Origin: Styela clava
Lineage: Eukaryota
DNA: 64,000 bases
Reading direction: 5' to 3'
Assembly: GCF_964204865.1 (NCBI RefSeq)
Contig: NC_135254.1
Location: 11,160,001-11,224,000, forward strand
Translations under genes and position numbers: made by a program
Shown here: in pieces, positions 8,046-64,000 of the stretch
Position numbering within the stretch: position 1 is the first letter of the stretch
Layout of the letters: each line of letters begins with the position of its first letter
Notes under the pieces: model-generated
Told to the model about the DNA's origin: nothing
What the model saw: the letters and a program-made list of their open reading frames with translations, nothing else
Database searches by the model: none

Positions 8046-11000
8046 TCAATACTTTTTCATCGACTCTAAATCTCTTGCAGTATAGCCTTCCCATTCAATA
8101 AGGTATTCAAACCGCTCTTTCCCATCATTGTCAAACCTTATGCGTTTCCCAAGCACCCTGAATCTCTCTCCACATTTGACTCTATCTTCTGCACCAAAGT
8201 ATTGAGCCATCGCATCTCTGAGCGATTTGACATCATCTGTGCTTCCAGAAGAACTGAATAACAACATAGATTTAGTGTAATTTACAACAATATGATGGTT
8301 AATTTTCGTTTACGAGAGAATATAAATATCTAATGCGAGATAATAATAATTATAAATTTTTCTGCTGCACAATATCATGACAAGAAGACACTGTTACAAA
8401 AATACATACAACTGCTATACTAGATATGCGCAAGCAGCGCAAAGCATAACACATTAGGTAAGATATTATCCATTTGCATCATAGCATAACAGGTCAAAAC
8501 ATCTACGTGAAAGATGAATTTTAGTGCACCTAGATGCCGCATAGCCATAGCCTGTACCCAAACCTGGTACACATACTATGTTCAGGATGTGCGCCATCTT
8601 GGTGCACATACTTCTGGAGTTCTCTAGTCTAGTGTTAGTGATCAGAAAAACCATACCAAGATGAAGCAGCATCATTCAAGAAAGATGAGTTAGATCCCCA
8701 TAATTTGGAAATAGAAGATCCACCTTCTGAGTTTTTACCAGAACTTGTTGAAACATCAGAATTCTGGAAAAACACAAATAAAATTCAGACAATCTTATTT
8801 GAGTACATAGTGCGGCCCCGGTATCTTCAAGGAATTTACCCAATCATGTTTGAATCGCAGATCTACAGACTAAAAATCTTTCCATATATTCCATATACAG
8901 ATCCAAAAAATTATTCTATTATTAATTGATAAGAACTTATGTTATAATGGGTTTCAATATTAAAAGGCATCGTACTTTATTAGAGAATACCCAATTGTAT
9001 GAATGCCAACCATTTTCGGCAAATACATGATTAAAACTAGGAATAAAAATTTGAATACAATAAAATGATTTAAAAATTTTTATATAATTGAATAAGATAT
9101 TTATTAAACGCATAGAACCTTGCGTTTTCTTCGCTTGGATGGAGGACCAGGCCATGAAGCTTTGGACGAGTTAAGTGAAGAATTTGACAAGCTTCTTTTA
9201 AGACCCTCTGATTTAGAACGCCGGCCTGGTCTACCTTTCTTGGGTGGTGGAGGCATACTACCATCACTAGAACAAAACAAAAAATCATATATGATTAGAA
9301 ACTCTGAAAAGATGTATACTGGATATAAGGGCAATGAAATAATTTGCAAGATAGCAGTAGCTCATTGTTTATTAAGGCTATGAAAAGTGATTCAAGAGTC
9401 TTATATATTTCTGTCGAATTATGATGTCTGACGAAGTATGAACTTGATCACACGAAAAGTTACAGTTTATGTGCAGAAAGACTTTTGAATCACTCAAAAT
9501 AGTTACTGTTGTTACAGCATCCTTGCATTATATGTATCAGATCCACCGATGGAAAGGCACAAAAGAAGGATAGATAGTTAGTCCCACAGCTATGCTGATA
9601 TAATTATAGATATAATAGTCAATATAGTGAATTCTATACATCTTTTCAAGAACTTGAACAAAAATGTCAGAAATGAACTACAGGTAGTTGTAAGTATGCC
9701 TCGAAAAATAAAAAAAATTTAAATGAAAACTGAATTTTCTTCAACGAATAAAATAAAATGAAGTTTCAATCGTTTATTCGATATTGTCCACATACAATGT
9801 GTATCTCTTAATACACTAGGTATCAGTTTCGGTTGAGTTTTGCTGATGAATCTAAAAAACCCTATACATACAATGAGTATGATTGCATTCAATACCTTTC
9901 AAATCTTTCAAACAAATTATCTCTGGCAGAATCTACTGGTGATGCTACGTTGAATAAACCACTTTTCACAAGATCTTTCACTGGACTTCTGACAGATGCC
10001 TGAAAAATATTTGCTTTTGAATAAAGAAATATCATCCAAAGCATAATAAAGCACTACCTGATACAACAATATGTGCACTCGCATGATCATTTTTTGACAA
10101 GAAAAAGGATTCAAAGAGTGCCTTATGTTTTTACTGGAGGTCAATGACAATGTGATGGATTGTGTATGCTTTCGGTAATGACTACAAAATTGTCACATCT
10201 GCATCTGTCATCAGTATTTGTCACATTATAACATTGGTCTCACTATTGAATTTATTAGTGTCATCTTACTTAGAAATTGCATAGCCATAGAAATTTCAAA
10301 CATGAAAAAAAAAGTAGATATTTTGACGCTGAATACACAAAAATTTCTGATAGCTTTGGCTACATGGGTACTTCCATAACTCATATCATAACCATCCTCC
10401 TACCTGTGCATTAGAACGAGGAGAAACCGGAACACCTGGTTGACAAGGTCCATTCTTTTTCAGCGGAGTCGGTGAGTCACTAATCACAAATAGTAAAGAT
10501 AGAAAATAACGTTATTATATTCTAAGTGAAATATAACCAAACGAACAAATTATTTCCATATTCATCATCAGTCAAAAACAAAAATTAATTCTACTGAGGA
10601 ACATTCATGATTTACATAAAGAAGAAAAAAAAGAATAAAGGCCAACTGTTTCCTTTATGACCTACTCATATGCGTTTTGCTCTGAATAAGGCCTGGGCAA
10701 GCAGCCACTACTGAATAAGAAGCTTGAAAGAACTTTATATTCAGCATTGCCCATTTAATTTATTTATCCTCAGTGAGCCATTGGATCTGAGATTTGCAAT
10801 ACCATCACACCTAAGTCTAATGCTTTAATATTAGGCCGCAATATCATCAGCAACATCATACATTTAAGTAAAAGACATATCAGAGTTACAAAAAAAATTA
10901 TGGTAGATGAATTTTCCATTTGGATCAAACATATAAAAATAAAAACAAGGTTGCAAAACTTACAACCAGCGCTCACAGAGCTTGAAACAATATTTTTACC

Positions 11001-14000
11001 TCAGTGCACCGGAACCATGTTTCAGGTCTAATGTTTCAAAAGTGTCATCATTAATTTCCAAACCGGCTGGTAAAGATATTGAAGGAGGAAGAGGTGGAGA
11101 ACGATTCCTGAGACCCCAAAGTACTTTGGTTTTCTTGCATTCGGTACTGCTCTGAAATCTGTGTAACAGAAATCAGTGGTGAAAAACTACTATTACAACC
11201 TTGATTCTAATAGCAAGATGACCAACGAAGTCTTAATCTTTAGAAGGGATGAACAAATCGGATATGAAATATCGAATTTATTCTAAATTCGGAGCAAATT
11301 TATGTTAAAGTTACATAGCGACAATCACATCTAAAACAGCATAAATATAATTGTTTTCTCTGTGTTGTTTGTTACCAGTTGAGATATCTTTTGTTAGTTC
11401 TGACAGCTCAAAATCTCGAATTTTTGTTATAAGAACGTTCCAAATTATTCTTAAATTCAAAAATTTACTATGGAATAACGAATATAATGAATGTCGACTG
11501 AATTCGAATATTCGATTCATTTTGGACATTCCTGATCACGACATATCGAAGATTTTATTATTTTTTTTAAAAAAATACCTTGTTTTATAATGTTGAAGAG
11601 TGTCGTTAACTTTTTGTCTTAAATGAGATCTGGTAGCTACATCTTTTGCCATCTGTAAATACAACATACCTTTTTATTTATGACAAGAACATGTTGAATT
11701 AATTTAACAAAATACATAACACTCAGTGAAATATTCTAGACTAGCTCTCATTTCCTACAGTTTGTTGTTCTAGAGACGTATTCTGGTAAATTTTATTTAC
11801 TAACATTTTTACTGAAATATCATGTAAAATAGTGAACAAAAATGCTCTACTGACCTAAATAGTTTTTAAGTTGAAATTAAAAAGTTGAGTAAAATTTAGC
11901 ATTTATTAAACTCAAATTAAGATAGACAAACAAGTTCAAGAATACTGAATTATTTGAATAGTCCAAGATAGTTAATTACTATATTTTGTATACAAAAAAA
12001 AATCACATACACTGCCCAATCTCAGTGATTCCATATGTTTATTGAAGAATGTAATCATACTGTCGACATCGTAATATTTAACCTTCTTAGCGATTGTTAT
12101 GTTGTACAGAACCAAATGAATAACATCAACCCTGCGAAAAAAAAAACATTAAATAACTCATTAAATTCAATAAATAACAATATAATACAGAAAAATGATT
12201 CAACCTATCCAACTTAACAACGAACTACAACCTTTAAAATCTCTTCTGAAAAATAAATTAGCTATTAGGCCATTAAATAGCCTAACTAATGAGGCCAAAT
12301 AGTCTTTATTTGAATATTCTTACCATTTCATAGGTAGACGCTTTATATACTCATTGCCATTGTTGCATACTGCACACACGAACAAGTAATATCTATCACC
12401 ATATAAGATTGGAGACTCAAGACATTGAAGACAAGCTGTTCAACAAGACAGGAAGGAAACAAATAACAGATAATACAAATTAATTCTATTAAGAGTCATG
12501 TTTCAAATTTAGGATATCGTCATGTGAACCAATTTCATTATTTCTTATTTAGATTTAATAAACTTATTCAAATATTACAGTATAAAAAATCAAGCTTGCC
12601 ATAAAAAATTACCACAAGTAAAGTGGGTTACTTACTAGTACAGACATAAGAAAATTGCACCTATCTTAGAATTAGAAATAATGTCATTTAATATATCATT
12701 TTTATCTTACAATTGATTCTTGATCTCCACATTAAAAAAAAGATAGATGACATCAAAATTTCGTTTATTTCAAGGTACAAGAACAGATACTCTGTTCAAA
12801 ATGTTGAAAAATATTGCCATAAGATTCAAACTTATATTTCGAACAGAATTACAACAAAAACAATATAAATTTCAGAAAAGGATTGTTTTCTACTTTTATA
12901 TTCAATTCACTATTTGACATAAGCAACGTAAAATAATACCTTCATGAAACCATTGATCACACCTTGCACACTGAAGCATTTTTAAATACCAATCTCCTGG
13001 GCCACCACAGTAACAATATTTCTGAAAAAAAATAAACCAAACATTTTAACTATAAAATATTGAATATATTCTGAATATAGTGAAGCCTAAATCTATTTGC
13101 CTAAATCATATTCATATATTTATAGATATTAACCGTTATAACTCTTAAAACCGAAAGTTTACATAGTTTTGATCGGTATCCCCCCAGCCATCAGCTAGAT
13201 AGAGACCTGTTTGTTATGGCCAGAAATGTGATTCCAAACTATTTTTAAAGTTGAGAATGTGGCTTAATATAACTGCTGTACTTCCAAATATATTTATTCA
13301 AATATATTCATTCATTTATTCACCCTGGGCTAATAAAACAAAAATTCATTGTACATTTCTATTACCTTTTTCAATAGTAAAGGTATGTCACTTGAGCGGG
13401 CAATTATATAAAATGAGAATATAAAATAAAGAATCAGGAGTCACCTCTTCTTCATTAATTTTATGATTCTTATTCCAAGTGAGGGAGTTTATGTCATATG
13501 GAAAAACACACTTCATCTGCTTCATCATTTCTGAAACAATAAAAAAATGCTTTGAAAAATGTCTGTCATGAAGGATATGCATACAATCAGCACAAAAGAA
13601 GTACAGTCAGGAATTTGAATTTTTCAAAAATGATTGTTTCTCACATATCTGTGGCTATTTGTAAAGAATACAATACAATGTAAGAGTATATTATATTTGA
13701 TAATATATAAAAATAGCAATTGCTAAACAAATTATAGGCCTATAGGCAATGAATTTTTAAAACAGTATTGAAAATGAATGGCAAAAGAAATCATACCTCC
13801 AGCTCCATGCTTTATAGCTCCCCCATTTCTTACGCAAGCTGAAAATACACAATTTCTACATTGCCATGGCACTTCTTCATCTTTTAATACAGTAGAATCA
13901 ATATGAGGCAAATGGCATTCCTGATGATAACCTGAAATTTTTTAATATAATCGTACTGTAATATAGTGAGTAGTGACAATACAATTCATAGCGATGCAAC

Positions 14001-15879
14001 ATAATTAGATACAAAAAATGGATGTTGGATTCAGTTGCTAGCTCTTCCAAAGCAAGCAATTAATACGCCGAATTGCTGTGTGGTTCAAGCATGTAACGAT
14101 ATAAGTCACTCATACATTATGTGCTTACATGCAGAATTCATTCATACAGATTGCAGTTGACGTATATTTGGGATGGATAAAAATTCTGAAATGTCAAAAT
14201 CCCTCATATTTAGATTATTTTTCGCATAATTTTTACAAACATTGTTTTACATCAGAGACGGAGACGTTCAACAAACAGCTTTCGGGCCACAGTATGTTTC
14301 ATGTAACATATTCACATGGCTTATAACATAGTATTCCACTAATTTAATAATGCATTTAATAATGCTTTTCCTTATATGTGACAGCCAAACTTTGTTTGTT
14401 AATAATAAGGCGAGTGTTGCAAGTTTGTAAAGTTAGAATGTAAGAAGCAACATGAAGAAATTTGATTACAAAAAGCAGAAGTGTAATACAATAGTCATTG
14501 AAATAGTTCAATGTTCAATACAACCAAGATGTGATGCAATGCAACACTATTGTATAAAAACTTTGCTTTGTACTTAGCTAATGGACTGTTAGAAGATTTG
14601 GTTACCCATGAAGGCAACAAGATATTGATAAATATTGACAAGAATCATTTGATTGGCTAAAAATGTCTGGCATATTTGTCAATATAAGTAAACACAGATT
14701 GGTTACAAATAAAATAACTCTAACCTTGTCCGCATTTATCACATAAAACAATTTCATTCGGTGGATCAGAAGCTCCATCTCTACATAAAACACAAGTAAC
14801 ATCTGACAATTCATCTTCATCTTCCTCTTTAACAATTTTACCATCTTTTGCATCAGAATCTTCAGATAAATTAATATGATGCAAGTCTTTGAAATAAACC
14901 CAGAATTTGGAATCATCCTCAAATTTCATTTCACATTGCAGACCATGATCATATACCTATAAGAAATGTGAATAATCGAAGAATAAAGCATACCATAGTA
15001 CCAGTATACCTTATAGTAAAATGCAATTACCCTTTATCTAAACAGTTTAACCCGAACTGTGTAATATCTATGGACTAATTTTCATAAAAAATAGACCTAA
15101 AATTTAAAATTATTAGGTATAAATAAAAAAAAATTAATTTATAGTCAAATCATATACGATGAGTTTAAATTTCATTTACGGTAAATTATAATTTTCCCAG
15201 AATTGTTCACCCCTGTAAAATAAAGAATTTCAATTAAATAAGTTTCAAGTCAAAAGAATATGAAATTACGTAATAAAAACTTTCTTACATCACATATTGT
15301 GCCGAGATAATAAAGTCCATCTGACCACCTCGCTAAAACTTCCTGACCAGTTTTGTATTGCCCAAACATTTTACGATAAACATTATGTGCGGAATTTGCA
15401 TGCATACGAGAGCTATATCCTTCGATTTCTCTTTTGTTTTGCAATTTTTGGTCGGATTTCTGATCAGGATGTTTAATTTTTTCTTCAATAGCTTTGAGAT
15501 TTCCCTTGAAGTTAGTTTTTTTAGGCGATGGTTCATTTTTATGAAATCCGTTTAAAACCATATGAGGTGATGATGAGCATTGAGCAAGTTGCCCAGATGA
15601 ACCAAATGATTTTATCTTCGAATATGCTTCAGTGACAGTTTTATCTGTTTGGTTTACAGTCTCTGACAATCCATTCATAACTGGTAACACAATTTTTGCT
15701 TTGCATGGGCTGAGCGATCCCAATTTTCTTTTTGAAATTTTCGTTGGTGATGCAGGTTCTTCCATACCGTCATTTACTTTATGCAAAGACGCCAATGCAT
15801 GCCCATGCTTCGAAATAGAAGCCGTTGCAGTCAAAGGCTGAGATGCAGTACTATGAGAGGTATTTTTATTACGTACCAT
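8046..15879 (-). CDS. Polycomb-like protein (PHF1/MTF2/PHF19 homolog): Tudor, PHD1, PHD2, EH winged helix, C-terminal chromo-like domain; about 14 coding exons
   Basis: In-frame exons: 15879-15289 and 14956-14725 (Tudor [24 protein letters not shown]; PHD1 [16 protein letters not shown]), 13931-13797 (YHQECH..WQCRNC), 13530-13445, 13021-12940 ([26 protein letters not shown]), 12435-12324, 12131-12011, 11652-11579, 11158-11000 ([10 protein letters not shown]), further exons near 10440, 9940, 9190, 8700, and last exon about 8253-8046 ([27 protein letters not shown]). A probable non-coding 5' exon ends near 19320. Confidence 0.93.
8505..8622. mobile_element. Decayed hairpin MITE in the last intron of the Polycomb-like gene
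   Basis: Contains tgtgcgccatcttggtgcacatacttc, identical to the 3' arm of the 23946-24035 copy. Confidence 0.65.
11245..11533. mobile_element. MITE family with AGGGATG(T/A)(C/A)CAAA termini; related copy at about 55300-55650 and a partial copy near 57484
   Basis: agggatgaacaaatcgg / ttttggacattcctg ends with internal cgaatattcg-like motifs; similar ends cagggatgtccaaaacg / ttttggccatttctg at 55300-55650. Confidence 0.5.
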
Positions 15880-16307
15880 ACTGCAAACAATTATTTGTTA
15901 TATTCTGTATGAAAGAAAGAAAATTAGGATTCGCAACAAATGGCCTAGTGGAAAACAAGAGAGCAATACTTAAATGGACATAAAGGTACAATTATGAATT
16001 ACATTGAGCAAATCTGAACAATAAAGTGCTGGGTGCAAAACATATTAGTACAGGCATTTCAGTATGAGTACACTAGAGCCCCCTGAAATTGCACACGCGC
16101 GAAATCCATTTTGCACTCCGAAAAATATGTGATTACCCAACAGTATATCTGACAGTCCGAAAGGTAGTGGAATGAAACAGCCACCAAGAAATAGTGCTGA
16201 CTAGTTCTAACTTCTTATACGTCAAACTGATCTTTCGGCTTCATGAACACAGCAAAATGAACCAAACCAAAATATCACACACAATAAGTCTGAAGTGTTA
16301 TAATATA

Positions 16308-17454: not shown

Positions 17455-17734
17455 TACATTCTCTTAATTTGGAGATGCTTGGGAGATTGTTTGAAATCAT
17501 GGTGACTACAGGCACAGTATATTCAGATATTCCAGTACGGCACAGTTCAGCAGTTCTTTGATTCAAGAATTGGCACCACAATGAAAAACATCTATTATAA
17601 CAGTGCATGCAAACCCCTCCTTTACGGAAAAAGGTGAGCCTCGACATCGGCGCAAATCGATTAACCAAAGGCGCAATAACGCAATTCTAAAAACTTCACC
17701 CTCGGATTCTTTGGAAATAAATAATCCGATTCAC

Positions 17735-23890: not shown

Positions 23891-23945
23891 CTGAAGACAA
23901 TACTTCTCATTTCGATAGCGCATATATATGGTCTCCTGAAAATAC

Positions 23946-24035
23946 GGAGCTCCTGAAGTATGTGCACTAAGATGGCGCACAACCTGAACATAGTATAGGT
24001 TGTGCGCCATCTTGGTGCACATACTTCGGTAGCGC
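23946..24035. mobile_element. Near-perfect hairpin MITE
   Basis: gaagtatgtgcactaagatggcgcacaacct...aggttgtgcgccatcttggtgcacatacttc forms an approx. 31-bp stem with one mismatch. Confidence 0.75.
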
Positions 24036-30698: not shown

Positions 30699-30723
30699 CA
30701 TATACAGTACCGGTACTGTACTG

Positions 30724-49531: not shown

Positions 49532-52500
49532 ATGGAAGTGGAGATTAACAGTGATGAAGATGAAGTTGTAATTCCAAAGTCTACGTCATCTCAAAAGTTG
49601 ATTGTACCGAATGGGATTGAACGTTGTGCCAAAAATAATAATGATGTTGAAATGTCGAAGAATCATAGAAATAAAAAAACCATAATTGAAGATAAAGAAA
49701 GAAATAACGCGGTTGAAAATTTGGAAGATGTCTACATTATACCACCACCATCTGGAAATAATGTTGAACTTGAGTTATACAATTTAGATTCTAAAAAACT
49801 GAAGATCAGTAATTCAATGTTGGATCAAAATAATGACTTACGTATTAATAAGTTTACTGCTTTTAGAAAAAACAATTCTTTCCCTCTTTCTGCCGATTCA
49901 AACGGACCTTTTGGACAGCTTAGTAAATCAGAAAATTTTCAAATTCCATTACAAAATGGTGTAGTAAAAAGACTCTTACCCCCGATTAAAAAAGTAGCCA
50001 ATAAAAAGCACAGAACACTTTCAGACACTGATATTATTTCTTATGATTTCGAAAGTATGCCGAATAAATCACTATCTACCATCGACGGATCACCTGCGAA
50101 AAGTTTATCAATAGAACAAACAGGTAATTACTCAATTCATTTATATTACGTTTACTGTATAATCAATTTCTGAAAATAAATTTGTGTTTTCTTTCTTCAC
50201 ATCACATTTGATTTGATTTGAAGACTTTCAAATTTGAAAATCTTTATTTTTTTTCAGTAAAATTACTGATTCTAACTTTTTGTCTTTGAAATATATCCTA
50301 ACTAAGTTAGAATTTGTTACTATTCCTTATTAAATATTTACATTATTATGACATACTAGTATTGACATTGAGTTGTGTCACACATGATGAATACTATGCT
50401 ATGCCGGTATTACATATTTCGAGGTCTATGGATCTGGGCCTTGAGGGGGGGCATAATCAAGGCCCCTCACTAGGTGCCATTCGTAATGCTTGCACTTATT
50501 TAACATAAACTGACTTTTTTGGTTTAATAATTCGTTGACTCTAATACATAATGCTTTCATTTAATAATTGATGGAAATATGTTAAAAGCAGGGGCAGTAT
50601 TGAGAATCTTTGAAAAGGCAGTCAAAAATGATCAATTTTCAGAACGACTGTATGTTTTCCATCGTTCAAAGACTGATGTATTTCATTGTATAGCCTATTC
50701 AAAAAATTTTATATAAAATTATGTATATTTTGAAATTTCCGATTACAATTTTTTAGCAGATGAAATGGCTGTGAAGTTCCAAGTAGGAGGAGATGATGAT
50801 GATGATGATGAGTTATCTGATGAAGAAACATTTGATACAAGTACATCCTCTGATCATGAATCTGAGCAACAATCTTCAACATCTTCCTGTTCAGAAGATG
50901 AAGAAGTAGAAATGGTAGGTACAGGATGATTAAAGTGGGAAAATAGAAACTGATAACTAATATATTCAATTGTTAGTTAAATAGTGATTTTGACTTTGAA
51001 GATTGCATTGCATTTTGTTTGATAAATTTTTCAAATTTCTAGTAAATAATTGTATTGTAAAAAAGCTTTGGGCTCATAAACTAATCAATTTTCAAATCCT
51101 ATTTCCTTATATCATAAAATTTTATTTGCACTTCATTATTATGATGGCGACATTGTGTCGAAATGATATACAAAGACAAATCAAAATAAAATTTTTTCTT
51201 AGTTGTCTCATATAACGGTAGTTCTGATTGGTGTGTCGCAGAATATCAATCCATTCCCTACAAATTATTCAATACCGTATCCGCCGGCACTAAAAATTCT
51301 CATTAAATGTTAATATTTATTAAAAATAAATTAGCGTATCCGAGTACCAGTATCTTATTTAATTAAAACTATTTCTTGTCGTAATTTAATAATATCAATA
51401 AATTTAAACTTTTTTACCAATGCATTGACGACGTCTTCAAATGCTTTGAAGTTTGTGAGTAAGTCAAATGTCAGTTTGAAAGTTTGGAACGTCTGCCGTA
51501 TTATATTTCCCTTTTTGAAAATTTAATGTGAATTTTGTAACTTTGTACTTCAATCAATCTGCATAATATATATATATATATAAATATCTCTTTAACAAGT
51601 GGTTTTTTCATTTCCTGCCCAACAAAATATAACAACGAGTTCACTCATTCTTATATTATTAAACAATATTCATCAGTCATGACCATAATACATTATTCAT
51701 TCGGCTGTTTAATATAGAATTAAATTGCATATGCATTCGGTATAATCTTCATACACTAATGAAATTAATTCCTGATGTTATAATACAAGGAATTGGTTCT
51801 CCTGTTCAATTCATGTTTTATTATTACCTGTATTCTGTGACTAGCATATGCTGATGTATATGGCAAATGAATGATTTGTTTTCTATATTGACATGTACCG
51901 TAGTTATAGATTTGGGGGAAATTATACAGACAGTTGCGTGATTTTAAGGCTTGCATACCCCGCATTGATACCCTAGCCAGCTCGTGACCTCATCCATAGT
52001 AGCGAAAGATTAATTAAAATAGGATTACATTAGGATAGGATAGGATTTACATCAGCGCTTTTCAACCAGGGGTCCTCGGCCCACTAGTGGGCCGATGAGT
52101 ATTTCGTTGCGGGCCGCGAATTCGTTGCCAAATTATTCGTAATTTTCTATATTTTGTGGTAAAATTGGAATTATTTGGACTTTTAATAGGATAGCAATAC
52201 ATTTCTAAAGAGGATCTCAATCGATACCAGGATAATACTGCTTTCATTTTTCCATATGTATGAAAATACGAATCAATTACGAATTTAATTATGATCGGGC
52301 AGTTTACCACAAATTTTATGTCCGCAGATTGCAGCGATATTTTAGAATAATATTACTTTCATTTTTTCGTAAGTCATGAGTTAAGTTGAACAAAATTTAA
52401 TTAATAACAGGTACAGCATTTTAAATGCTGGTATCGGTCATGGATTCGAATATTTTTTATCTACAGAAAATCATCCTAATAAAATTTGATACTTTTAACT

Positions 52501-55500
52501 ATCATTATCAAATATATTTGTAAAAAAGCAGGAAAAAGTATAAATTATTTTTGGGTATCATAACAATTACGGCTTCACATAATTTTCACCGTTCCGACGT
52601 AACGGAAATTAATGGGTAAATAGGAAGCCTTGCAGGGGCTTGGCGTCAATTCCCAATACGAAACTGTGCAAAATTGTCGCAACCATACGCGACACACGCT
52701 CGCACAGCAGATAACAATCAAGGTATCGATTTTATTTCCTCACCATTACAATGGATGTTTCCCTGACCTTTGACCCCAGAAAAATTCTTCCTATACTTTA
52801 CTATGGCAAAATTTTATATGCTGTTTTGAGAGTATTTTGGATAGTTGGTGAATATAAACTGGTGCACCTGTTCTTCGGTTTCTAACCGATATTCTATCAA
52901 ATGTTGATTTTCTATTTTCTCAATTATTGTTATAACTTGTCGATTTTAATCGGTAAGTATGTTGATAGGTATTTGTCTGTATGTATGTTAGATGCACGCG
53001 ATATCTCACGAAAGCGAGATTGAATCTGCTCCAGATTTTGCACGTGCATTCATCTTATCTCGGACCAGCAGCCTATTGATTTTGGGCAAATTATGTCACA
53101 TAATTAGCGAGTTAATAATTAATTAGTGATGGGACACAAGGTGTCACTATGGAGTAAGAGCGCTGTTTTGGGGGATCCCCTAACTTTCGATCGATAAGTC
53201 TTCGGTCTCTGACCGATATTCTCGTTTTATATATTGATAAACCGTATAACTCGCCTTACACATTTTTGAACCATGTAGGCCTACCAATTGCTTTTATAGA
53301 TAATTTATTTCGTAAGACTAAGAGTCTTCATAAGAACATATAGACGGAGCTATAAACTCATAAAGCTCAAAATCCATTTATTACTGCTGTTGATTAATGA
53401 TATTTAAATTGTCTTCTATTTGATTGATCAAATATTATTCTTTAGAAACCGGTTTGGCTATGTATTGCATACGCTAGGTAGGTTGGTGAGCTATCTTAAT
53501 AATAACTCTTATCCGGCCCGGAGTAGTTTTGTGCGTTTTTTTCTCTGTAATATTTTCTTACCTGTTATTCATGTTATCTTGCTTTTTAACTTATTGGATT
53601 GCTTTTGCATTTAATTCTCAATTCTTCTTGGGCCCTGTAATGACTCCAGCACCAGAAAACCTCGCCCCTATATTACCTCATTCTCTATTTGAAGGTGAAC
53701 TAAACAATGTCCTTGGTTACCGGCACCGTACTCTGTGCGGCCATATCTTTGAAATGTCGTTCCCATGGTTACATAACTGACGGTGCTCGGAGTCTAGTGT
53801 TGTACATATTTGGTTTGACTTTTGCTGTCTTTTTTTCTTCATGATATAATGTTTGACTTCTTTCTCTCTTCTGTTTATATTTCTGTTAGACTAATTCGCG
53901 GGTGTCGCTGCTCGTTAACCAGTTTTGGTTTCTCGCGATTCCTTTCGCCCTGAGATGCCGTATTTAAATGCCTTTATTATATTTATTTGCATGAAGTGTT
54001 TTTTTTTTCGGTTTGGTGAAAAAATAAATTACTGATTACTGATGTTTACAACCATGCTTGAATTCCAATTGGTACGTCATTATTGACTTACTGCTGATTA
54101 GCCATTGTTACGGAAATAAACATAGTTATCGATTGTTGGGGGAATATCTATATCGGGAGGAATTTTTTAAAAGCTTTCCCTCAAAGTGGCTATTATTTGA
54201 AAATTTGCCGAAGAAGTATTCGAATATCTTGATATTTGATTCCTTTTGAACAACCCTGCCCCGACCTCTGAAAAAAAAACGTTAATAAAGGTTCTCCGCA
54301 AAGTAAAACTCTCAATGTAAGTAGGCCGCAATATAAAAAGATTGAGAAGCACTGATTTACATATTTATCAGCCTCCTGTTCAGATGGAATTAGTTATTTG
54401 TTTCAGATGCATGAACTTGATGGTGGAGAATGCTTTACCGACCAGCGGTGGTTACCGGAACCATCCTACGACAGCGAGGACACCAGCAATCCTCTTGCAA
54501 ATAATTCCTCCACAGAATTCGAACTTACGAATCTACTTAGGGTAATCAGCGATGCGGTGGCCAGTGCAATTCTAACGTTCTAATGTTTAGCATGATGCAT
54601 CTCATCGTCGATTAGTAGGAACATTGATAAACTTTAAAACTTAAAGTGTATAATATAGCCTGTTTGGAGATGAGTATGATGTGTATTACTGTATTTAAAA
54701 ATAAAGGATGATGTATTTTTTATGAACTCATGATTGTGATTTTTCAGTAAAGAAAGTCGTTTCTGTTCAAGTGTTAAAATGTCACCTTCAGTCTCATTCT
54801 GGAAAATGCTACTTCATTGATTATTTGAGATAAATCCTTTGTTTAATACCCTCTTGCCTTCATTAATGCAAATCATTAATGCAATACTCGCTATGCAATA
54901 ATCCTTTCAATCATTAATGCAAGATATTGAGTGTCTACTGCATGCATGTGGCTTTGACAGCATTGTTATATTTGGTTTTATTATGAATTGCATAATGTTT
55001 GAATTTGATATAGACTTATCTTATGTTGAGGTTTGAATATTATATCATTCAGTCAGTTTACAGTCTTACAGAGTTCGTAGGCGAGAACTAAATATTCATG
55101 TGAAGTGCCAGTTGAACTCTTAGATCACAAACTGCTTTTGACAAGATAAACAAAAGCAAAAAAAATAGGTTTTATATTTAGGTGAATCTTTTCAATATAA
55201 ACAAGGAATCATATTAGTAATGTTATTTGACATGATGATGCTAGCGGAAAAATGGCGAATATTCTTTATGTGTAATGCAAAACTTTCCAAATGCCGATTC
55301 AGGGATGTCCAAAACGAATAAAATATTCAAATACATTAGAAATTCATCATATGTGATGTAGTAAATTTTTGAATTTAGTAATAATTTAAAACATATTTAT
55401 TTAAAAATTAGGGATTTTGAGTTGTCAGACAAGTAGAACAAAACACACGATATCTCAATTGGTAAGAAACAACACAGAAAAAACAATGACCTTTTAGATT

Positions 55501-58500
55501 TGATCAACATTAAGATATAGTTTTTATGTAATTTTCCACATCAAATTTAGCCAATGTAGAATGTATGCCAATTTAGAATGTATTCAACATTTCATATTCA
55601 AAAATATTTTCTCTGAATGTATTTGAAATATTCGGTTTTGGCCATTTCTGACCGATATATTTCATTGCTCAAAAAAAGATTGTTTATTCATTCGTTCAGT
55701 CATTATTAATGTTTTTTCATTATTTAATAATGATACTATGTCTAGTAATCAGAAATAAGTAAAGCTACGACTAGATTATAATTTATCGATAGTTTGGTAA
55801 CTACTGGTCTGAATTCAGGCAGGTTCAGGAATCTAAATTAATGCCAGTTTAAAATTTATTTTTATAATAGCCTTCCTTATTAAATAATTGGTGCTTTTTG
55901 ACAGTTTGATTGATTGATAAGTTTTAACCTTTTTCTCAGGCAGGTTCAGGAATCTAAATTAATGCCAGTTTAAAATTTATTTTTATAATAGCCTACCTTA
56001 AATAATTGGTTTTTATTGACAGTTTGATTGATAAGTTTTATCCTTTTTCTCCTTTTCTGTTAATAAAATTTAAAGATTTTATAAAAAACACAAATGCATC
56101 TTTCATTCAGTTTCTGTCATTGTAGAACAATTTTGAAATGATAAGAGAAGTTCTAATCTCTAAAACTCCCATCAAATATTAACAGATCTCATAATACAAT
56201 TTTTTTAAATTTTTACAGAACACCTTGAATATTTCTGAAAATCTCCAAACAAAACTTCTCAAAGTTTTAAAATTGGAAGAAATAAGAAGCAAGAGCCCGA
56301 CGGCATCAGTTGCTTCAGCTCCAGTGTTCCCGAATAAAAAACGACTTTCATTAAGCGATGACGAAGATAACATAAGTGTAGTGTCAGATTCTAAGGTCAG
56401 TCAATGATTCAAAATATTATTGTTTGAAGGACTTAGTTGGGCCTTTCTAAGCTGAATTTCTTTGATACTGTTTTAATAACTTGATATTTTTGATTAAATT
56501 TACTTTATTTTCGTATCAGGTTATCAGAATACGCTCTGGATCAAGTAAAAATCGAGGAGGGGTGTCACGTAATTTATTGACCCCTGAAGATCGAAAGTCG
56601 CGCAAAAAATCAGCTTCTAGCGATATAGAATTTATGGCAAAACAAAAGGATGCTGATCTCTCACCACGCAGTGCTCTTGGTGATGAAATATTGGATTATG
56701 ATGATGAAATATCAGAAACACCCTCAACTAGATCAACCGGAATTTTACCTGCTTTATCTTCACATGGTGTGAGAGAAAGGTAATTTGATGAAAATATTTT
56801 TTAGTAATTTTTTGAATTTTTAAACAGCATCCATTACTGTGGAGAATCAATGCTCTGTAAAGGCATGTAATGTCAAAAACAGGTTAGTTTGTTATCTCCA
56901 GACAATTTACTTTCGCTAGTCTTGTCAAGTTCACTGCCCAATCATTTGTTAAAAATTTCAATTGACCTTTGGGTTTTCAATTTAATTTGGCTCAAAAGCC
57001 TTTCACAATATTTTTGGTAGAACAACATACTTGGCATGGGTCTACCATAACAGTTCGCCTATCATCAATGTATTAAGCTAGAACTTTAGTTGATAAAACT
57101 ATGCACCAAAATGTAATTTTCCTCTTAAATAGAGAAGAGCGTCACTCTTAATAATTAATGCTGTCTGATTGCATATCCGGAATAAATTATTCAACTAATC
57201 CAGTTTTGTTCCAACTTTGTAACGTCACACCCTTTATAAAAGCATAGAATTATTTAGTGTTTTGTTAATTGGTATTGGGAAAGTACTTTCTCTCATGTGG
57301 TCCATTTTCATTTTCAATATGGGGATTTCATTCATCTGTAATTTTGTTGGGGTCATAAATTTACTTCCCATTTCGGCCAATTTCAGTCGGTTCGCCCAAT
57401 CTTAAACGACCCGAAAATTGACTGTACCATATATAATGTGTGGCTCAGTGATTAGATTGTTTATTACCATTATCATGTCTATGCCAGACATGGCCAAAAC
57501 TGAATATTTCACTATTACGAATACATTGTCAGAAAATATTTTTGAATATGGAATATTGAATACATTTCAATTTGTGGGGAAAATTACATAAATATGTACA
57601 CAATCTAATCTTTTTTTACATCTTGTTTTTTTTGTGCCACAACTAGCTGTATAGCAGAGGGCGTTGATAAGTAAAATATGCCATTTTATATTTATTTTTA
57701 TGGTATTAATAAATCAGCATTGTCAATATGGGTCCAAAAAACATATTTGTGAAAATTTTTCAATGGGTTATGTTTATTAATAAAGCTAGTAGGTGATGGT
57801 AAATGCAATATTATACACCCCAGCCTTGTTAGGAGTAAACTTTTTGAACTACAATAAAATATACTAGGCCTATAATGTATATAAATATTGCAATTCGAAT
57901 ACTATTTATTATATAATGCGACAATTATCTATTGAAATACTGTATATCAGAAAACTACCGGTATTCTTCAGCCCTCAGAATTTTGTTATTACAATTTATT
58001 TCATAATTATGCTGTAGAATTCTGTAGAAAAACAATTTAAAACAGTGTATGTTTGTATTGGTGCGACGGGAATCTCCACTATTAACCAAAACCAAATATT
58101 CAATGTTATTCTTGAAGCTTTCATAACAAAGAAATCGGATTTAATGAAAGACGCAACAATGAGATGGAAATTCATTTAGGTCATGTCTCGTAAAATGGCG
58201 TTTTTTTGATCAGTTCTATTCAGTCTGTTTCTCCCATTTTAACAATGGACATTGAAAGTTGTGTTCTGTTGGCTTGTGCTTCATTCAATGTTTCGTACAT
58301 ATTATGTTTAGGAAAAGAATAAATTGGTTGACGGTTGACGCACACAACAACGATCAATCCATTATCAATTGGCTAAATTAGATAACACGTATCAAGTGAC
58401 CATACGTTTCATTAAGTCAGTAGTAGTAGTTCTCATACTTTCAAGATCCATGGCTCCCTTCCAAACACTCTCATCCTTTGTGAACACCTGAACTTCTATG

Positions 58501-61500
58501 AAAATACTAAGTTTATAGCTTATTGCTTTTTCATTAGTTATTTTATGTGGCGTGCTTAATTTTAATAAAAATAATAAATAATAAATGTATTACAGTCAAA
58601 GAATTTACCCAATATTTTATAAAAGTAGACATGAAATGTTGCATTATATTCCTAATTTGGTCATGTCGATTTGGAAATCCTTGTCAACAATACATATACA
58701 AATCCAATCAATTGCTATACATATTATTTTTTCCTAAATGAAGTACCCTACATTTATTTAGATATTTCTATGTTGAAAGTGGCATAAAAATAACCAAAAT
58801 CTATTTTATGTCATAGCTTAGAAGATATTTCTTGCCTAGGAAGTATTACTCTATAGGTGTGATGCAGACAAACCAATCCAATTAATTGGAAAATTTTCAA
58901 ATTTATTGGTAAATATGATTCCAATACCCCGCAGACACAGTTTACAAAATCAGTATATAAAAACTTGCATGATTTATCAGCTCAACCAATGAGTATTGTC
59001 ATTAGTCTGCAAACACTCCACACCCTAGGATCAAACATTTTATTTCATTATTTATTGCCTTCTAAGATTTGTTTGGTAACTGTTTTCATAGTTCCTATGT
59101 ATTAAGGTATTGTTTAAATGTTTGTTATATACACAAATGAAAGCTTGTCTGTGACGTTGGTACAGCTTGTAGAGGGGAAAAGTGCTTGGTTATAAACTTA
59201 TAACGGGTTATATCATAGTTGATAAATTTGTATAATATACATCAAAAGATGGCCTATTTTTATAAGAAATTGATGTTTTTCATTGATTTTGTGAAGTCTT
59301 ATTCGATTTATTTTGGGAAATGATTATTTATTTAAATAGTTCGTGGACAAAAAATTATGCCTATTTCGGTGTTATAAATAAAAAAGGTGAAATAAAATTT
59401 CCCTTTTTCAATTTGATAAATATAATAGCCTACTAAGTGAAACCGAGAGTTATAGTACAATCATGCTTGGCAAAAGACATTCCATGACATAGATATATAG
59501 CAACCCATTGTCATCTCTGTGTGACCGGCGAAACATAACACTTTTCATAAAATCATTTATATTCAACTGTGTCATCATCATAATGTTTTGTTGGTTGCCA
59601 GACAATAGACAAATTGTATTGTTCTTGGTCTTATCTACACAAGTAACCTCCGACCGGTTTCATTCTTCTATTATTGCGTCCATCCCATCTACATAATTAT
59701 GGAATCTCAGCTGATCTGATATGAAGAAATAAGTGTTTTTTTGATGTTGATGAACATTAATAATAGCTGTTTATGTGAGGAGAAATGGTCATGGGTTCCA
59801 TTCAATACCTAATCATCAATAAAATTCTTCATGATCATTGGTTTATGTACACTAAGTGCACATGCTAAATTGTTTTTATGGTGCGAAAATTGCCTTTCTC
59901 TGCAACTGACTCATATTATTTCAATTGAAGCGGGATCATTTTTTTTATCCCAATATGTTTGACTGACGGCTTTCGTCACTGTATTATAAAACAGGCACAT
60001 GGCCTCCATGCCCATATATTGTGAGCAATGCTCTTTTTTTTCAATTACTGTTTTTTTTTTATTCTTTGGTGTTTGGTGTCATCATCATATCATAATGTTT
60101 CATTTCAGTACTTATCAATGATAGGTATTACTGTCATCAAGTAGTGAATCTATGCTTTACTTTATATTTCAGGAATTTTCTTGTGGGAAATTTAACGAAA
60201 CATGGATCACTACTTGGAGCTGACGAATTGAACAGATATTTTCCTGATCGTATGCTGAGGTTGTTTGTTGGTAAGGAGGTCGATCATTTCATTCATAGTC
60301 AAACAATGTTCCTGAATAGTTTATCATTGATATCATGCTATTCCGGTTCTCTTACCTTGTTCTATACAATTAAGTAATTGTGGCATTCAATTGCGCAACA
60401 CTCAGTATAGTCTTAAGTGTCCAAATAAGGTTTCAGTATACTTAAAAATCTGTTATCTTCTCTGAGAAAAATGCATCGTACAAGTTTTACTGTAATATAT
60501 CCTAATTAATAACTATTTATGTGAATTAACATAAAAGTGATGTTTCTAGTTCTGCCATATTATGTATGCAATTATGCAATATTATATCAGATTTTCAATC
60601 TTCTTTCAAACAAGGATGTTGCTTTCAAATTACATGTGTGCGTACACTCTCAGTCATATCCAAAAAATGTCTTAATAATGGAACAAATTTCTTAAACAAA
60701 ATTTGAGTATCTGCATGTTACATTCTCCCAGGAACATGGAATATGCAAAGAAAAGGCGTTCCAAGAAATTTGAATGATTTTTTATTACCTCAGCACGAAG
60801 AATATTTGCAAGATATGTATGTAATTGGAGTGCAGGAAGCCACACAAGATTTGTAAGTCCTAAGATGGTATCGTTTTTTTTGACTCGTATGATTTAAAGA
60901 ATGTAATGACAACCAAATATAACATTTCAGTAAAAAAATTGTATATTATTCTCGGACCTCCAGAAGTATGCGCACCAAGATGGCGCACAACCTGAACCTA
61001 GTAGGTGTGTACCGGTAAGGATTCAGGTTGTGCGACCTATTCGTGCGCATACTTCTGGAACACCTTATTCTCACTAAAATATTATTCAATAATTAAAATA
61101 CTTAGATTAATCGGAGTAGGTCTGTTGAGTTTGTTAAATTCTTTGAACTGATGGCATTCGTATTCAGTGTGATGCTGAGCAAGCGTAAGTTCAATACAGG
61201 AGACCACGCCACGCCTATTGTGTCAATTCCTATACAAATATCTCTTGGCAATATATTATTACGATTCATAGCTTGTGGCAGAGCTGAAGTTTTTCTTAGA
61301 ATTGTACAGTCTTGATGACATCCCATCAAGTTCACTTGGTATTGAATAGTCTTTTGAAAACCTGTGTGATTTTAACCTTCAGTATGTTTGTCGTTACCTC
61401 ACTGTTGTCACAGTAATGTGCTACTTGCACTTTTGTCAAGATTTTTTCAAGTACCTGCTCATGTGTTCGAGAGTTCTCATTTAAAAGCGCTGTTGCTTTG

Positions 61501-64000
61501 TTGTCAGATATAATTAACAATTACGAAGCATTCCTGTTCGATCACAATGATTTTTTATTAGCATGAGGGTTAAATGAGAATTTTCTTTAAATATAGTTTT
61601 AACTCGACATCATCGAGTAATTTGTCAACATGGCATTAACAAGAAAATTTCTGAGATATAAATCATCATAAAATAGCACATATGCAAGCTAAAACATATA
61701 ATATTTCATATATTATTTTCGGATTTTAAAATATATTTAAATTTTATGTATAGGCATTCACTTACCACTTACAGTGTTTCCCAACCTGGGCATACTTTTT
61801 ATACATACCCTAAATTGTTTATGTATCTAATTTCAGGAAAAAGTGGGAAATAAAATTGCAAGAAACACTTGGTCCAAATCATGTGTTGGCACATGCAGTA
61901 TCACACGGTGTTTTACATATGTCTATATTTATAAGACGAGATCTAATATGGTTTTGTTCACGTAAGTGTCATGGCTCTTGTCACAGATGTGGCTTTATAT
62001 TCAAAATAAATATAACACATATTGCAAAATGATTAAATCATCGTTACTGGAATTTTGATATTGTAGCAAAATATTTTACTGTCATAGAAACACAAGTTCA
62101 GTGATATATATTCGCAATTCAGTATACAAATATAAAAAATATGCTGTGACCAAATATTGCTTGTGATGGTCTCTTTTTTTCATTGCATTATCCCAGCCCA
62201 GTTGGCTTTACTAGTTGGGTAGACTGTGGAATCATGTATGTCTGCTGGTTTGTGTAACCTAACCCACTATATTACCTGGGAGAATTAGAAATCGTTTGGT
62301 ATGCTAGTCCATATTTCTGCATCAATGTGGCTTCTGTACTTTTTGCTGTGATTAAATACAGAAGTATTGAATTTGGAAAAATTCTTAGATAATGGATCTT
62401 TTCTTTTTTCATTTGTCTAGTCATTTCATTATGCTTTGTTCCAAGCCTCAAGTTTTTTTTTACAACAGCATTCGAAGAAGATCGTGTGACAACAAGAATG
62501 GTTTCACAAATCAAAACGAAAGGAGCGGTTGCAATATCTTTTCAATTTTTCGGTACATCAATGATATTTATAACATCACACTTTCATTGTAAGTTTTCAT
62601 TTTGAATACCAGTGAGAAATAATGTTGCTTCTCTTCAATAGCTAATTGTTAGGTATCACACTTGCACAAGCAGGATGAAGCATATTTCAATGAGTGCTCA
62701 AAGCAATATTCTCATTACATAAGGAGCTGTGGGGGTTGATTCTAAGCAAATCACATATTACCGTAGTAGTATTAAGGGTTATCCTGTAGTGTGTGGGTTA
62801 GGGTTAGTCCATAATTTTCTTTCGATTTTCCTTATTTAGTTCTATTACAAGTTTGGGGACTGTCTGTGTTAGCCAAGTGAATATACCATAGGTTCCAGTC
62901 CCTTTACACAACATGATGTAAAGTAGGCGAACAAAATCAGTTAGCTCCACATTGGTACGCACACTTCTGAAGCACTGTATATAGTATATTATATACATGA
63001 AAACTGTTATTTTGAGAAATATTAATGGAAGATTATAGAACAGACATGATATGTTGTAAATTATGTTTTCACTACACTTTGAAAATAGCCGATTATTTTA
63101 GATTTACTGTCAAAACACCATTTGGCCTGAAATTCAACTTTGTTTTATATGTATATTTAGCTTGCCAGATTTCCAAATTCAGATTTGAAAATATGAAATT
63201 GAAATATAAATTGATCTCAATATGAAAATATCCTATTATTTTAGATTTACTGTTAAAACATCATTTGGCCTGAAATTCAACTTTGTTTAATATATTTATT
63301 TAGCTTGCCAGATTTCCAAATTCAGATTCGAAAATATGAAATTGAAATATAAATTAATCTCAATATATACTCTGTTGAGTATGATCTGTTGTGGTATAAA
63401 TTCAATATTCCATATTTAAAAGTGGTATTATAAAATGTATTCAAATCAGTGCATTATTCAGTATTGACCATCTGTATAATGATGCTCGATTATGGATTTG
63501 GGATTATTATATATACATGTTTATTACAGCTGGTGAAACGAGGGTGAAAGAACGCATCGAAGATTATAACAGAATAAAAGAAAGAATTAAATTACCTAGA
63601 AAATTAAAATGGGATACTTATAAAAGTTCACAAGATGACGTTACAACAAGGTAAATCTAAGTAGAATAGTTCAAAATTTAAAACTCTTTATATAGAATGC
63701 TTTTAAAAAAAAAGAATTCCCAATTATTCTGTGGAAAAAGGCATTTTTGTCACTTGTTTTTGAACAAGTTATGGTTGCTCTTACTTTATGAAATCTTGTT
63801 TAATATGACCAAGCATAGCATAGAATATATATGGCCTGCACTGTACAAGACTTGTTCTTGATTAGTTAGTCCTTGAATTATCTTCAATTTCGTTTTTACT
63901 TCCAAGATTTGATTGTACGTTTTGGTTTGGAGATTTGAATTTTCGAGTCAGTCAACCTCATGAAATAATGCACCAAGAAGTTAACAATCCAGATAATTAT
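49532..64000 (+). CDS. INPP5E: Inositol polyphosphate 5-phosphatase E, 3' incomplete; exons 49532-50123, 50757/50760-50914, 56219-56395, 56520-56779, 60173-60270, 60732-60852, 61837-61961, 62469-62588, 63530-63650, 63907 onward
   Basis: Phase-compatible exons. [109 protein letters not shown] closely match INPP5E. Linkage of the N-terminal exons is inferred from phase. Confidence 0.93.
52925..53230 (+). mobile_element. Helentron-associated (HINE/DINE-1-like) element
   Basis: gtctgtatgtatgt microsatellite near the 5' end and a 3' hairpin cggtctctgaccg followed by atattctcgttt; a duplicate of the 3' end sits at about 52873-52895. Confidence 0.45.
54354..54580 (-). mobile_element. Diverged SINE copy in INPP5E intron 2, antisense to the gene
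   Basis: gatttacatatttatc, gcatgaacttgatggtggag, ccagcaatcctct and ttcgaac..gtaat..gcggtggc..ctaacg align with the 41388-44174 SINE. Confidence 0.8.
55815..56050. repeat. Tandem duplication, 2 units of about 120 bp
   Basis: caggcaggttcaggaatctaaattaatgccagtttaaaatttatttttataatagcct... occurs twice head to tail. Confidence 0.9.
60954..61064. mobile_element. Hairpin MITE copy
   Basis: ccagaagtatgcgcaccaagatggcgcacaacctgaa...ttcaggttgtgcg...gtgcgcatacttctgg. Confidence 0.75.
62776..62976. repeat. Copy of the 5200/39476 MITE-like family
   Basis: Shared core; includes gggttagggttag near the 5' end. Confidence 0.7.
63081..63366. repeat. Tandem duplication, 2 units of 143 bp
   Basis: Units start at 63081 and 63224 (gaaaata..ttattttagatttactgt.aaaaca.catttggcctgaaattcaac...) with few mismatches. 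Confidence 0.92.

What the first reader, a model, noticed from the sequence alone, without database searches (positions are those of the whole stretch)
8046..64000. Candidate proto-MHC block: recognisable genes map to the human MHC or its paralogous regions
Seen: Polycomb-like, GTF2H4, an RNase L/IRE1-like kinase, C6orf136, PGLS, a kinesin-like gene and INPP5E within about 56 kb. Established: human GTF2H4 and C6orf136 lie in the MHC (6p21.33) and PHF1 in the extended class II region, next to the kinesin KIFC1. PHF19 and INPP5E lie at 9q33-34, PGLS at 19p13 and RNASEL at 1q25, the classical MHC-paralogous regions. Inference: this is a retained piece of the pre-duplication proto-MHC linkage group in an invertebrate, and it includes an innate-immunity-like gene. 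Any orthology of the kinesin to KIFC1 is not shown.
Basis: partly seen in the sequence, partly recalled or inferred. Interest (0 to 1): 0.8.

Follow-up and report, generated by a model that had tools for sequence, protein, structure and literature searches.

The report
Sea-squirt chromosome matching the MHC paralogon
The listed genes are real, and this sea-squirt (Styela clava) chromosome descends largely from the ancestral chromosome that gave vertebrates the MHC region and its three sister regions, but this is chromosome-wide conserved linkage of a known kind, not a compact or immune "proto-MHC" block.

Summary
All seven genes are present. Five can be assigned to human counterparts: Polycomb-like (PHF1/PHF19/MTF2), GTF2H4, C6orf136-like (DUF2358), PGLS and INPP5E. 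All five map to 6p21.3, 9q33-34 or 19p13. An Lhx2/9 gene lies 54 kb beyond the window end.

The window is on a 24.9-Mb chromosome, C5, of Styela clava. Of seven detectable single-locus markers I chose, five lie on C5: PRRC2 (2.0 Mb), PBX (7.5), BRD (12.8), Notch (15.5) and ATAT1 (23.6). C5 is 6.6% of the genome, so P is about 2e-5. CSNK2B and VPS52 lie on other chromosomes. The linkage-group claim therefore holds.

The anchors spread over the whole chromosome, as on amphioxus chromosome 7, and some retained ancestral linkage groups are already published for ascidians. The 56-kb window is not a compacted block. Three MHC-resident orthologs within 31 kb is about what chance gives once or more along C5.

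The "RNase L/IRE1-like" ORF is an orphan IRE1-like pseudokinase with no detectable KEN domain. It comes from a large dispersed family, so it says nothing about RNASEL. The kinesin is an intronless degenerate N-terminal-motor gene, not KIFC1.

The scan holds other synteny notes on this genome. My look-ups found none on this claim.

The parts
8046..15897 (-). Polycomb-like gene (PHF1/MTF2/PHF19 family). Exons seen: 15253-15897 (N-terminus and start of Tudor), 14723-14956 (start of PHD), 13735-13941 (PHD), 8049-8309 (Mtf2_C tail)
   Evidence: Pfam Mtf2_C E=4e-16 (59 bits, cut-off 27); Tudor_2 and PHD partial hits
24551..27768 (-). GTF2H4 (TFIIH p52/Tfb2) gene. Exons 27583-27768, 26559-26816, 25382-25636, 24905-25159, 24551-24751
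   Evidence: All five exons hit Pfam Tfb2 or Tfb2_C, E 4e-9 to 3.5e-15, in collinear profile order
34154..36319 (+). Intronless 721-aa IRE1-like pseudokinase ORF. HRD motif reads HMA. It keeps the HPYFWS kinase/KEN junction motif, followed by a tail that cannot be assigned
   Evidence: Pkinase E=5.5e-28; best solved relatives are IRE1 kinase domains at 79 bits; the only close relative in the word search is itself; no KEN by Pfam, phmmer or hhalign; sequence read
38232..39357 (+). C6orf136-like (DUF2358) gene. Central exon 38535-38831; probable flanking exons in 38232-38531 and 38953-39357
   Evidence: Pfam DUF2358 E=6e-7, 30.1 bits, cut-off 24.3, on the central exon. The flanking exons are inferred from reading the sequence only
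40272..41345 (-). PGLS (6-phosphogluconolactonase) gene, three exons
   Evidence: Glucosamine_iso; NCBIfam TIGR01198 pgl at 60, 46 and 49 bits on collinear profile parts, deaminase models only 15 bits
41770..43698 (-). hAT-type transposase remnant in three frames (Spin-doc zinc finger, DUF4371, hAT dimerisation domain). Not part of the conserved gene set
   Evidence: Pfam hits
46463..48472 (+). Intronless 669-aa pseudo-kinesin with an N-terminal degenerate motor and a coiled coil. 99% identical to a Styela clava protein named KIN-7L
   Evidence: Only Microtub_bd, below its cut-off; best solved relatives are OSM-3, KIF1A, KIF3C and CENP-E, with kinesin-14 Ncd weaker; P-loop and switch II altered; word search
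49532..64000 (+). INPP5E gene running off the window end. Phosphatase-domain exons at 60096-60374, 60707-60853, 61814-62029, 62393-62602, 63400-63651 and 63866-64000. The 5' exons (49532-50170, 56195-56780) are probable only
   Evidence: Human INPP5E (2xsw) is the sole or far best solved match: 62.5 bits, and 50 bits against 21 or less for other 5-phosphatases; Exo_endo_phos2 partial hits

Best explanation
The window is an ordinary stretch of Styela clava chromosome C5. Much of that chromosome descends from the single pre-duplication chordate chromosome whose four vertebrate copies carry the MHC (6p21.3) and its paralogous regions (1q, 9q33-34, 19p13). Old single-copy genes stayed on this chromosome while their order was scrambled, so a run of neighbouring conserved genes here tends to have human counterparts in the MHC paralogon. 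Lineage-specific genes have been inserted between them: an IRE1-like pseudokinase, a pseudo-kinesin and transposon remnants. Nothing shows that the 56-kb cluster is held together by function or that it has an immune role. Shown here: the gene identities and the chromosome-wide marker enrichment. Inferred: the history of retention plus scrambling, and the human map positions, which come from established knowledge and from the cited papers.
For: - Gene identities.
- Window position: C5:11160001-11224000.
- Markers on C5: PRRC2/BAT2_N at 2.03 Mb, PBX/PBC at 7.48 Mb, BRD/BET at 12.79 Mb, Notch at 15.49 Mb (EGF repeats, three LNR modules, transmembrane segment and RAM-like motif read), ATAT1 at 23.63 Mb.
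- Markers off C5: CSNK2B on C3 and VPS52 on C17.
- Five of 7 markers on 6.6% of the genome gives P=2.4e-5.
- Lhx2/9 lies 54-60 kb beyond the window end; its best solved match is human LHX9 at 82 bits.
- Amphioxus shows the same pattern. One chromosome matches human 1, 6, 9 and 19, with 55 MHC-related orthologs scattered along it (PMC13012124). The five assignable window genes fall inside the four human blocks that paper delimits, judged from my own knowledge of human map positions.
- Ascidians are already reported to keep some chordate linkage groups while gene order is scrambled (PMC12448946; PMC8809688).
Against: - Three orthologs of genes resident in the human MHC (PHF1, GTF2H4, C6orf136) lie within 31 kb. 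GTF2H4 and C6orf136 are also near neighbours in a conserved vertebrate block (PMC10845735), so a trace of ancient local order is not excluded.
- Only 7 markers and about 160 kb of flank could be examined.
- GATM (human 15q21), an intronless SNRPD1-like gene (18q11) and a probable IRE1 gene lie close by. C5 is therefore not a pure copy of one linkage group.
- Orthology was judged from family-specific domains and best solved matches, not from gene trees.
Confidence: 0.78

Rival explanations
1. A real conserved microsyntenic core. The adjacency of GTF2H4 and C6orf136 (and perhaps Polycomb-like) survives from the pre-vertebrate gene order of the MHC class I framework, kept together by shared regulation or by slow breakage.
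For: The two genes are 10.8 kb apart here with only a lineage-specific ORF between them. In duck and human they sit in one framework block, DDR1-S100A16-GTF2H4-DHX16-C6ORF136-ATAT1 (PMC10845735). Ciona keeps tenascin next to Notch (PMC1578592), so small remnants of this kind do occur in tunicates.
Against: ATAT1, the next gene in the vertebrate block, is 12.4 Mb away. No DHX16 or DDR1 was seen in the window. By my rough estimate, three or more MHC-resident genes among five has P about 0.011 per window, and C5 holds about 389 windows, so one or more such windows is expected by chance. No other species could be examined.
Confidence: 0.14
2. Pure coincidence in a fully scrambled tunicate genome, with no retained linkage group at all.
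For: Tunicate genomes are known for heavy rearrangement (PMC8809688; PMC12448946).
Against: Five of seven chosen markers are on the same chromosome, P=2.4e-5. Lhx2/9 is also nearby.
Confidence: 0.03
3. A functional proto-MHC with an innate-immune member. The IRE1-like ORF would be a forerunner of RNase L, sitting where RNASEL's ancestor sat.
For: The kinase domain is closest to IRE1 and keeps the HPYFWS junction motif. Like RNase L it looks like a pseudokinase, with HRD read as HMA. A probable IRE1 gene lies 234 kb away on the same chromosome.
Against: No ankyrin or KEN domain is detectable. The word search found no close relative other than itself, and the distant hits (24-30% identity) cover only part of the protein. 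The ORF is intronless and belongs to a dispersed expansion: 46 KEN matches on at least 12 contigs, and about 35 family genes per earlier notes s1-814204 and s1-810831. Its position therefore carries no orthology signal. The single-sequence structure model was unusable, pLDDT 35.
Confidence: 0.03

Closest known systems
Amphioxus proto-MHC chromosome (Asymmetron chromosome 7 / Branchiostoma; PMC13012124; Abi-Rached 2002 and Castro 2004 as cited there)
   Same: One invertebrate-chordate chromosome carries orthologs of genes from human 1q, 6p21, 9q33-34 and 19p13. The MHC-related orthologs are scattered along it and there are no class I/II genes.
   Different: This is a tunicate. Linkage is less complete (CSNK2B and VPS52 are elsewhere) and genes of other origin are mixed in. 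Only a handful of markers were tested, not hundreds of orthologs.
Chordate / bilaterian ancestral linkage groups in ascidians (PMC12448946 for Styela clava, Botryllus and Ciona; PMC8809688 for Ciona)
   Same: Partial retention of ancestral chromosome-scale linkage, with loss of gene order.
   Different: In the passages I read, those papers paint the groups globally and do not name the Styela chromosome that matches the MHC paralogon. I only searched their text for a few terms. Here that chromosome is identified with named anchors.
Vertebrate MHC class I framework 'D-P block' (DDR1-S100A16-GTF2H4-DHX16-C6ORF136-ATAT1-..., PMC10845735)
   Same: GTF2H4 and C6orf136 are close neighbours here as well.
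   Different: The other block members are absent from the window, and ATAT1 is 12.4 Mb away.
Ciona tenascin-Notch adjacency (PMC1578592)
   Same: A small remnant of MHC-paralogon linkage in a tunicate.
   Different: That is a different gene pair. Tenascin was not located here.

Membership tests
Proto-MHC / MHC-paralogon ancestral linkage group | Neighbouring genes are orthologs of genes in human 6p21.3 or in its 1q, 9q33-34 and 19p13 paralogous blocks | tested here: met
   Polycomb-like, GTF2H4, C6orf136-like, PGLS, INPP5E and Lhx2/9. Human positions come from established knowledge and from the block limits given in PMC13012124.
Proto-MHC / MHC-paralogon ancestral linkage group | Classical anchor families (NOTCH, PBX, BRD, PRRC2/BAT2, RXR, C3/4/5, PSMB, tenascin) on the same chromosome | tested here: met
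   NOTCH, PBX, BRD and PRRC2 are all on C5. The ANATO (C3-type) search was blank and says nothing. RXR, PSMB and tenascin were not tested.
Proto-MHC / MHC-paralogon ancestral linkage group | Enrichment on the chromosome beyond chance | tested here: met
   Five of 7 detectable markers on 6.6% of the genome, P=2.4e-5. Most of the marker list was written down before the searches (note); the LNR model was added afterwards.
Compact 'en bloc' proto-MHC | MHC-related orthologs concentrated in one short region | tested here: not met
   Anchors lie at 2.0, 7.5, 12.8, 15.5 and 23.6 Mb of a 24.9-Mb chromosome. CSNK2B is on C3 and VPS52 on C17.
Compact 'en bloc' proto-MHC | Immune, stress or antigen-processing genes inside the block | tested here: not met
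   None were found among the window's ORFs. The IRE1-like ORF has no shown immune role.
RNase L | N-terminal ankyrin repeats, pseudokinase, C-terminal KEN ribonuclease | tested here: not met
   No Ank or Ribonuc_2-5A hit in the 733-codon frame. The ORF is not among the 46 genomic KEN matches at E<=1. The tail has no solved relative. hhalign aligns only the junction motif.
IRE1 | Luminal sensor, membrane span, active kinase, KEN domain | tested here: not met
   Only the kinase domain matches. The N-terminal 185 residues hit no family. The catalytic HRD reads HMA.
KIFC1 / kinesin-14 | C-terminal motor domain with intact nucleotide motifs; closest to kinesin-14 | tested here: not met
   The motor occupies the N-terminal part of the ORF, roughly residues 4-323 of the 673-codon frame. 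The best matches are kinesin-2, -3 and -7, with Ncd weaker. The P-loop and switch II are altered.
INPP5E | 5-phosphatase domain closest to INPP5E and not to OCRL, INPP5B, SHIP or synaptojanin | tested here: met
   2xsw scores 62.5 and 50 bits; the others score 21 bits or less.
C6orf136 (DUF2358) | DUF2358 domain | tested here: met
   30.1 bits against a cut-off of 24.3 on one exon. That C6orf136 is the only human DUF2358 gene is from memory and was not tested.

The most novel reading that the evidence does not exclude
The close linkage of GTF2H4 and C6orf136 (with Polycomb-like 9 kb further on) is a surviving piece of the pre-duplication gene order of the MHC class I framework. If so, part of the local order of the vertebrate MHC framework would predate vertebrates, although amphioxus shows only scattered orthologs.
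Probability: 0.13. Interest if true: 0.55.

Novelty: new member of a known kind. Interest (0 to 1): 0.3.

Why it matters
It names the Styela clava chromosome that corresponds to the MHC paralogon and gives usable anchors for it: PRRC2, PBX, the window genes, Lhx2/9, BRD, Notch and ATAT1. It suggests that in the sister group of vertebrates the MHC-related genes are still spread over a whole chromosome. That is in line with the view that compaction of the MHC happened on the vertebrate stem. It also warns against reading immune meaning into such windows. The one "immune-like" gene here belongs to a large lineage-specific IRE1-like expansion, which is the more interesting lead.

Tried and rejected
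- **Protein atlas.** It was closed for new sequences.
- **Flanks.** About 160 kb of flank plus 10 kb at the Notch locus was read, not the planned plus or minus 200 kb.
- **Blank marker searches.** NOD, the ABL F-actin-binding domain and ANATO found nothing. These are short or intron-split domains and the blanks say nothing.
- **Supplementary tables.** None were held for PMC13012124 or PMC8040251, so gene-by-gene linkage-group assignments could not be looked up.
- **KEN domain in the kinase ORF.** Pfam, phmmer against solved structures and hhalign against two IRE1 proteins all failed. A single-sequence AlphaFold model was useless at pLDDT 35, so no fold search was run.
- **KIFC1 orthology.** Rejected, because the motor is N-terminal.
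- **RNASEL orthology.** Rejected as evidence for synteny.
- **Large protein search.** The search of protein representatives was not used, because the main claim does not rest on it.
Full report
**What the window is.** The sequence has about 35% G+C, no N runs, and short exons on both strands. It is G000:C5:11160001-11224000, on a contig of 24,897,793 bases in a 377-Mb assembly. The pseudo-kinesin ORF is 99% identical to a Styela clava protein, and earlier follow-ups of this scan also name S. clava. Multi-exon genes were tested exon by exon.

**Checking the observation.** All seven genes are there.
- Polycomb-like (- strand, 8046-15897): a last exon with Mtf2_C (E=4e-16), plus PHD and Tudor pieces.
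- GTF2H4 (- strand, 24551-27768): five exons hit Tfb2/Tfb2_C in collinear order.
- A 721-aa intronless ORF (34154-36319, +) has a protein kinase domain whose best solved relatives are IRE1 kinase domains.
- An exon at 38535-38831 (+) hits DUF2358, the C6orf136 family, over the cut-off.
- PGLS (- strand, 40272-41345): three exons hit the 6-phosphogluconolactonase model TIGR01198, and the deaminase models only weakly.
- A broken hAT transposase follows at 41770-43698.
- The 669-aa intronless ORF at 46463-48472 is a degenerate kinesin.
- INPP5E exons run from about 60.1 kb to the window end. Human INPP5E (2xsw) is the only or far best solved match, at 62.5 bits and at 50 bits against 21 or less for other 5-phosphatases.
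- No other conserved gene, tRNA or Rfam RNA was found in the window.

**Which genes carry synteny information.** Five do: Polycomb-like, GTF2H4, C6orf136-like, PGLS and INPP5E. Their families are single-copy or form one ohnolog family. From established knowledge, their human members lie at 6p21.32-33 (PHF1, GTF2H4, C6orf136), 9q33.2 and 1p22.1 (PHF19, MTF2), 19p13.11 (PGLS) and 9q34.3 (INPP5E). By my knowledge of their map positions, these fall inside, or for PHF19 at the edge of, the four human blocks that PMC13012124 delimits.

Two genes carry none.
- The kinase ORF has no close relative but itself in the word search. Its HRD motif reads HMA.
- It has no ankyrin hit and no KEN hit, and it is not among 46 genomic KEN matches at E<=1.
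- Its tail has no solved relative, and hhalign aligns only the HPYFWS junction.
- It belongs to a large dispersed family (earlier notes s1-814204 and s1-810831), so its position says nothing about RNASEL at 1q25.
- The kinesin has an N-terminal motor with altered P-loop and switch II. It matches kinesin-2, -3 and -7 better than kinesin-14, so KIFC1 orthology is rejected.
- Both ORFs are intronless and look lineage-specific.

Before searching, I wrote down most of a list of family-specific markers (note) and then located them in the whole assembly. The LNR and ANATO models were added afterwards.

| Marker (Pfam family) | Position |
|---|---|
| PRRC2 (BAT2_N) | C5, 2.03 Mb |
| PBX (PBC) | C5, 7.48 Mb |
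| BRD2/3/4 (BET) | C5, 12.79 Mb |
| Notch (LNR) | C5, 15.49 Mb |
| ATAT1 (Mec-17) | C5, 23.63 Mb |
| CSNK2B (CK_II_beta) | C3 |
| VPS52 | C17 |

- The Notch locus was confirmed by reading calcium-binding EGF repeats, three LNR modules, a membrane span and a RAM-like GQLWRPEGF motif.
- NOD, the ABL tail and ANATO gave no hit anywhere and are uninformative.
- Five of seven markers on 6.6% of the genome gives P=2.4e-5.
- In the flanks, an Lhx2/9 gene lies 54-60 kb beyond the window end (LIM1, LIM2, homeobox; best solved match human LHX9 at 82 bits). Human LHX2 and LHX9 map to 9q33 and 1q31, from knowledge.
- Unchecked earlier notes place a factor-B-type protease 3.0 Mb and NOS1AP 8.2 Mb further along C5. 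These are leads only.

The linkage-group claim survives its own refutation test.

**Why it is not a "block".**
- The anchors span 2.0-23.6 Mb of a 24.9-Mb chromosome, and two MHC-resident orthologs are on other chromosomes.
- ATAT1, next to C6orf136 in the vertebrate framework block DDR1-S100A16-GTF2H4-DHX16-C6ORF136-ATAT1 (PMC10845735), is 12.4 Mb away.
- This is the amphioxus picture. One chromosome matches human 1, 6, 9 and 19, and its 55 MHC-related orthologs are scattered over its length. The authors conclude that compaction came later (PMC13012124).
- Partial retention of chordate linkage groups with scrambled order is already reported for S. clava, Botryllus and Ciona (PMC12448946; PMC8809688). 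A tenascin-Notch remnant is known in Ciona (PMC1578592).
- Genes of other human locations sit close by. GATM lies 22-24 kb before the window (104 bits to human AGAT; human 15q21). An intronless SNRPD1-like gene lies 4.6 kb after it (human 18q11). A probable IRE1 gene, a 1268-aa open frame with a full KEN match, lies 234 kb after it.
- Human 15q has been proposed as an extra MHC-paralogous fragment (abstract of PMC1215479), so GATM may not be an exception.

**Is the local density special?** Three orthologs of MHC-resident genes lie within 31 kb. I took the amphioxus proportion, 47 of 432 orthologs, as the background. Three or more of five then has P about 0.011 per window, and C5 holds about 389 windows of this size. 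One or more such windows is therefore expected by chance. This is a rough inference, not a test. The GTF2H4-C6orf136 adjacency remains the one detail that could be an ancient remnant. I give that about 13-14%.

**Verdict.** It is a tunicate instance of a known kind of chromosome-scale synteny. Interest is modest.

**Limits.**
- No gene trees were built.
- The human map positions rest on established knowledge.

Noticed in passing
G000 genome-wide. Clusters at C3:5.77-5.91 Mb, C8:3.90-3.96 and 16.8-18.5 Mb, C1:30.97-31.14 Mb and C6:17.8-21.2 Mb; also C5:10.21 and 13.13 Mb: The KEN ribonuclease domain (PF06479) has 46 matches, 43 of them over the cut-off. Most lie inside stop-free frames of 370-515 aa, often in tandem arrays. 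This is a large expansion of IRE1/RNase L-type genes; vertebrates have three. Earlier scan notes count about 35 such genes.
   Followed up: partly
G000:C5:11457697-11458074 (-), about 234 kb beyond the window end: This is the best KEN match in the genome (144 bits, full length), inside a 1268-aa open frame without stops. It is probably the canonical IRE1 gene, apparently intronless, on the same chromosome as the window's IRE1-like pseudokinase.
   Followed up: no
L002 = G000:C2:18600763-18604080 (match at C2:18602263-18602580): A 318-bp stretch is 70% identical to the 3' tail of the window's kinase ORF. It sits in a 111-aa ORF with no kinase part and looks like a fragmentary copy.
   Followed up: partly
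L017 3604-9390 and L011 3-302 (C5:11277604-11284302, +): An Lhx2/9 (apterous-type) LIM-homeobox gene with two LIM exons and a split homeobox. Its best solved match is the human LHX9 homeodomain.
   Followed up: yes
L008 4598-5008 (-) (C5:11228598-11229008): An intronless SNRPD1-like gene (LSM domain plus an RG-repeat tail), just past the 3' part of INPP5E. It may be a retrocopy or may simply be the intronless functional gene.
   Followed up: partly
L015 5729-8203 (-) (C5:11135729-11138203): A glycine amidinotransferase (GATM) gene, 104 bits to human AGAT on one exon.
   Followed up: partly
G000:C3:9263176-9263727 (+): CSNK2B (casein kinase II beta) matches the whole 182-position profile in one 227-aa open frame. 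It is intronless here and lies off the MHC-paralogon chromosome.
   Followed up: no
window 41770-43698 (-): A hAT-family transposase remnant split over three reading frames (Spin-doc zinc finger, DUF4371, hAT dimerisation domain), between PGLS and the pseudo-kinesin. A similar element lies at L012 1913-3894.
   Followed up: partly
window 1700-3479 (-): A Sulfotransfer_4 family gene upstream of the finding. FReD-like, astacin, C-type-lectin-like and rhodopsin-type receptor exons lie in the flanks (L005, L007, L013, L014, L009, L016).
   Followed up: partly
G000:C10:16981211-16981309 (+): A lone Notch/LNR module outside the Notch gene. It could belong to a pappalysin-type or other LNR protein.
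   Followed up: no
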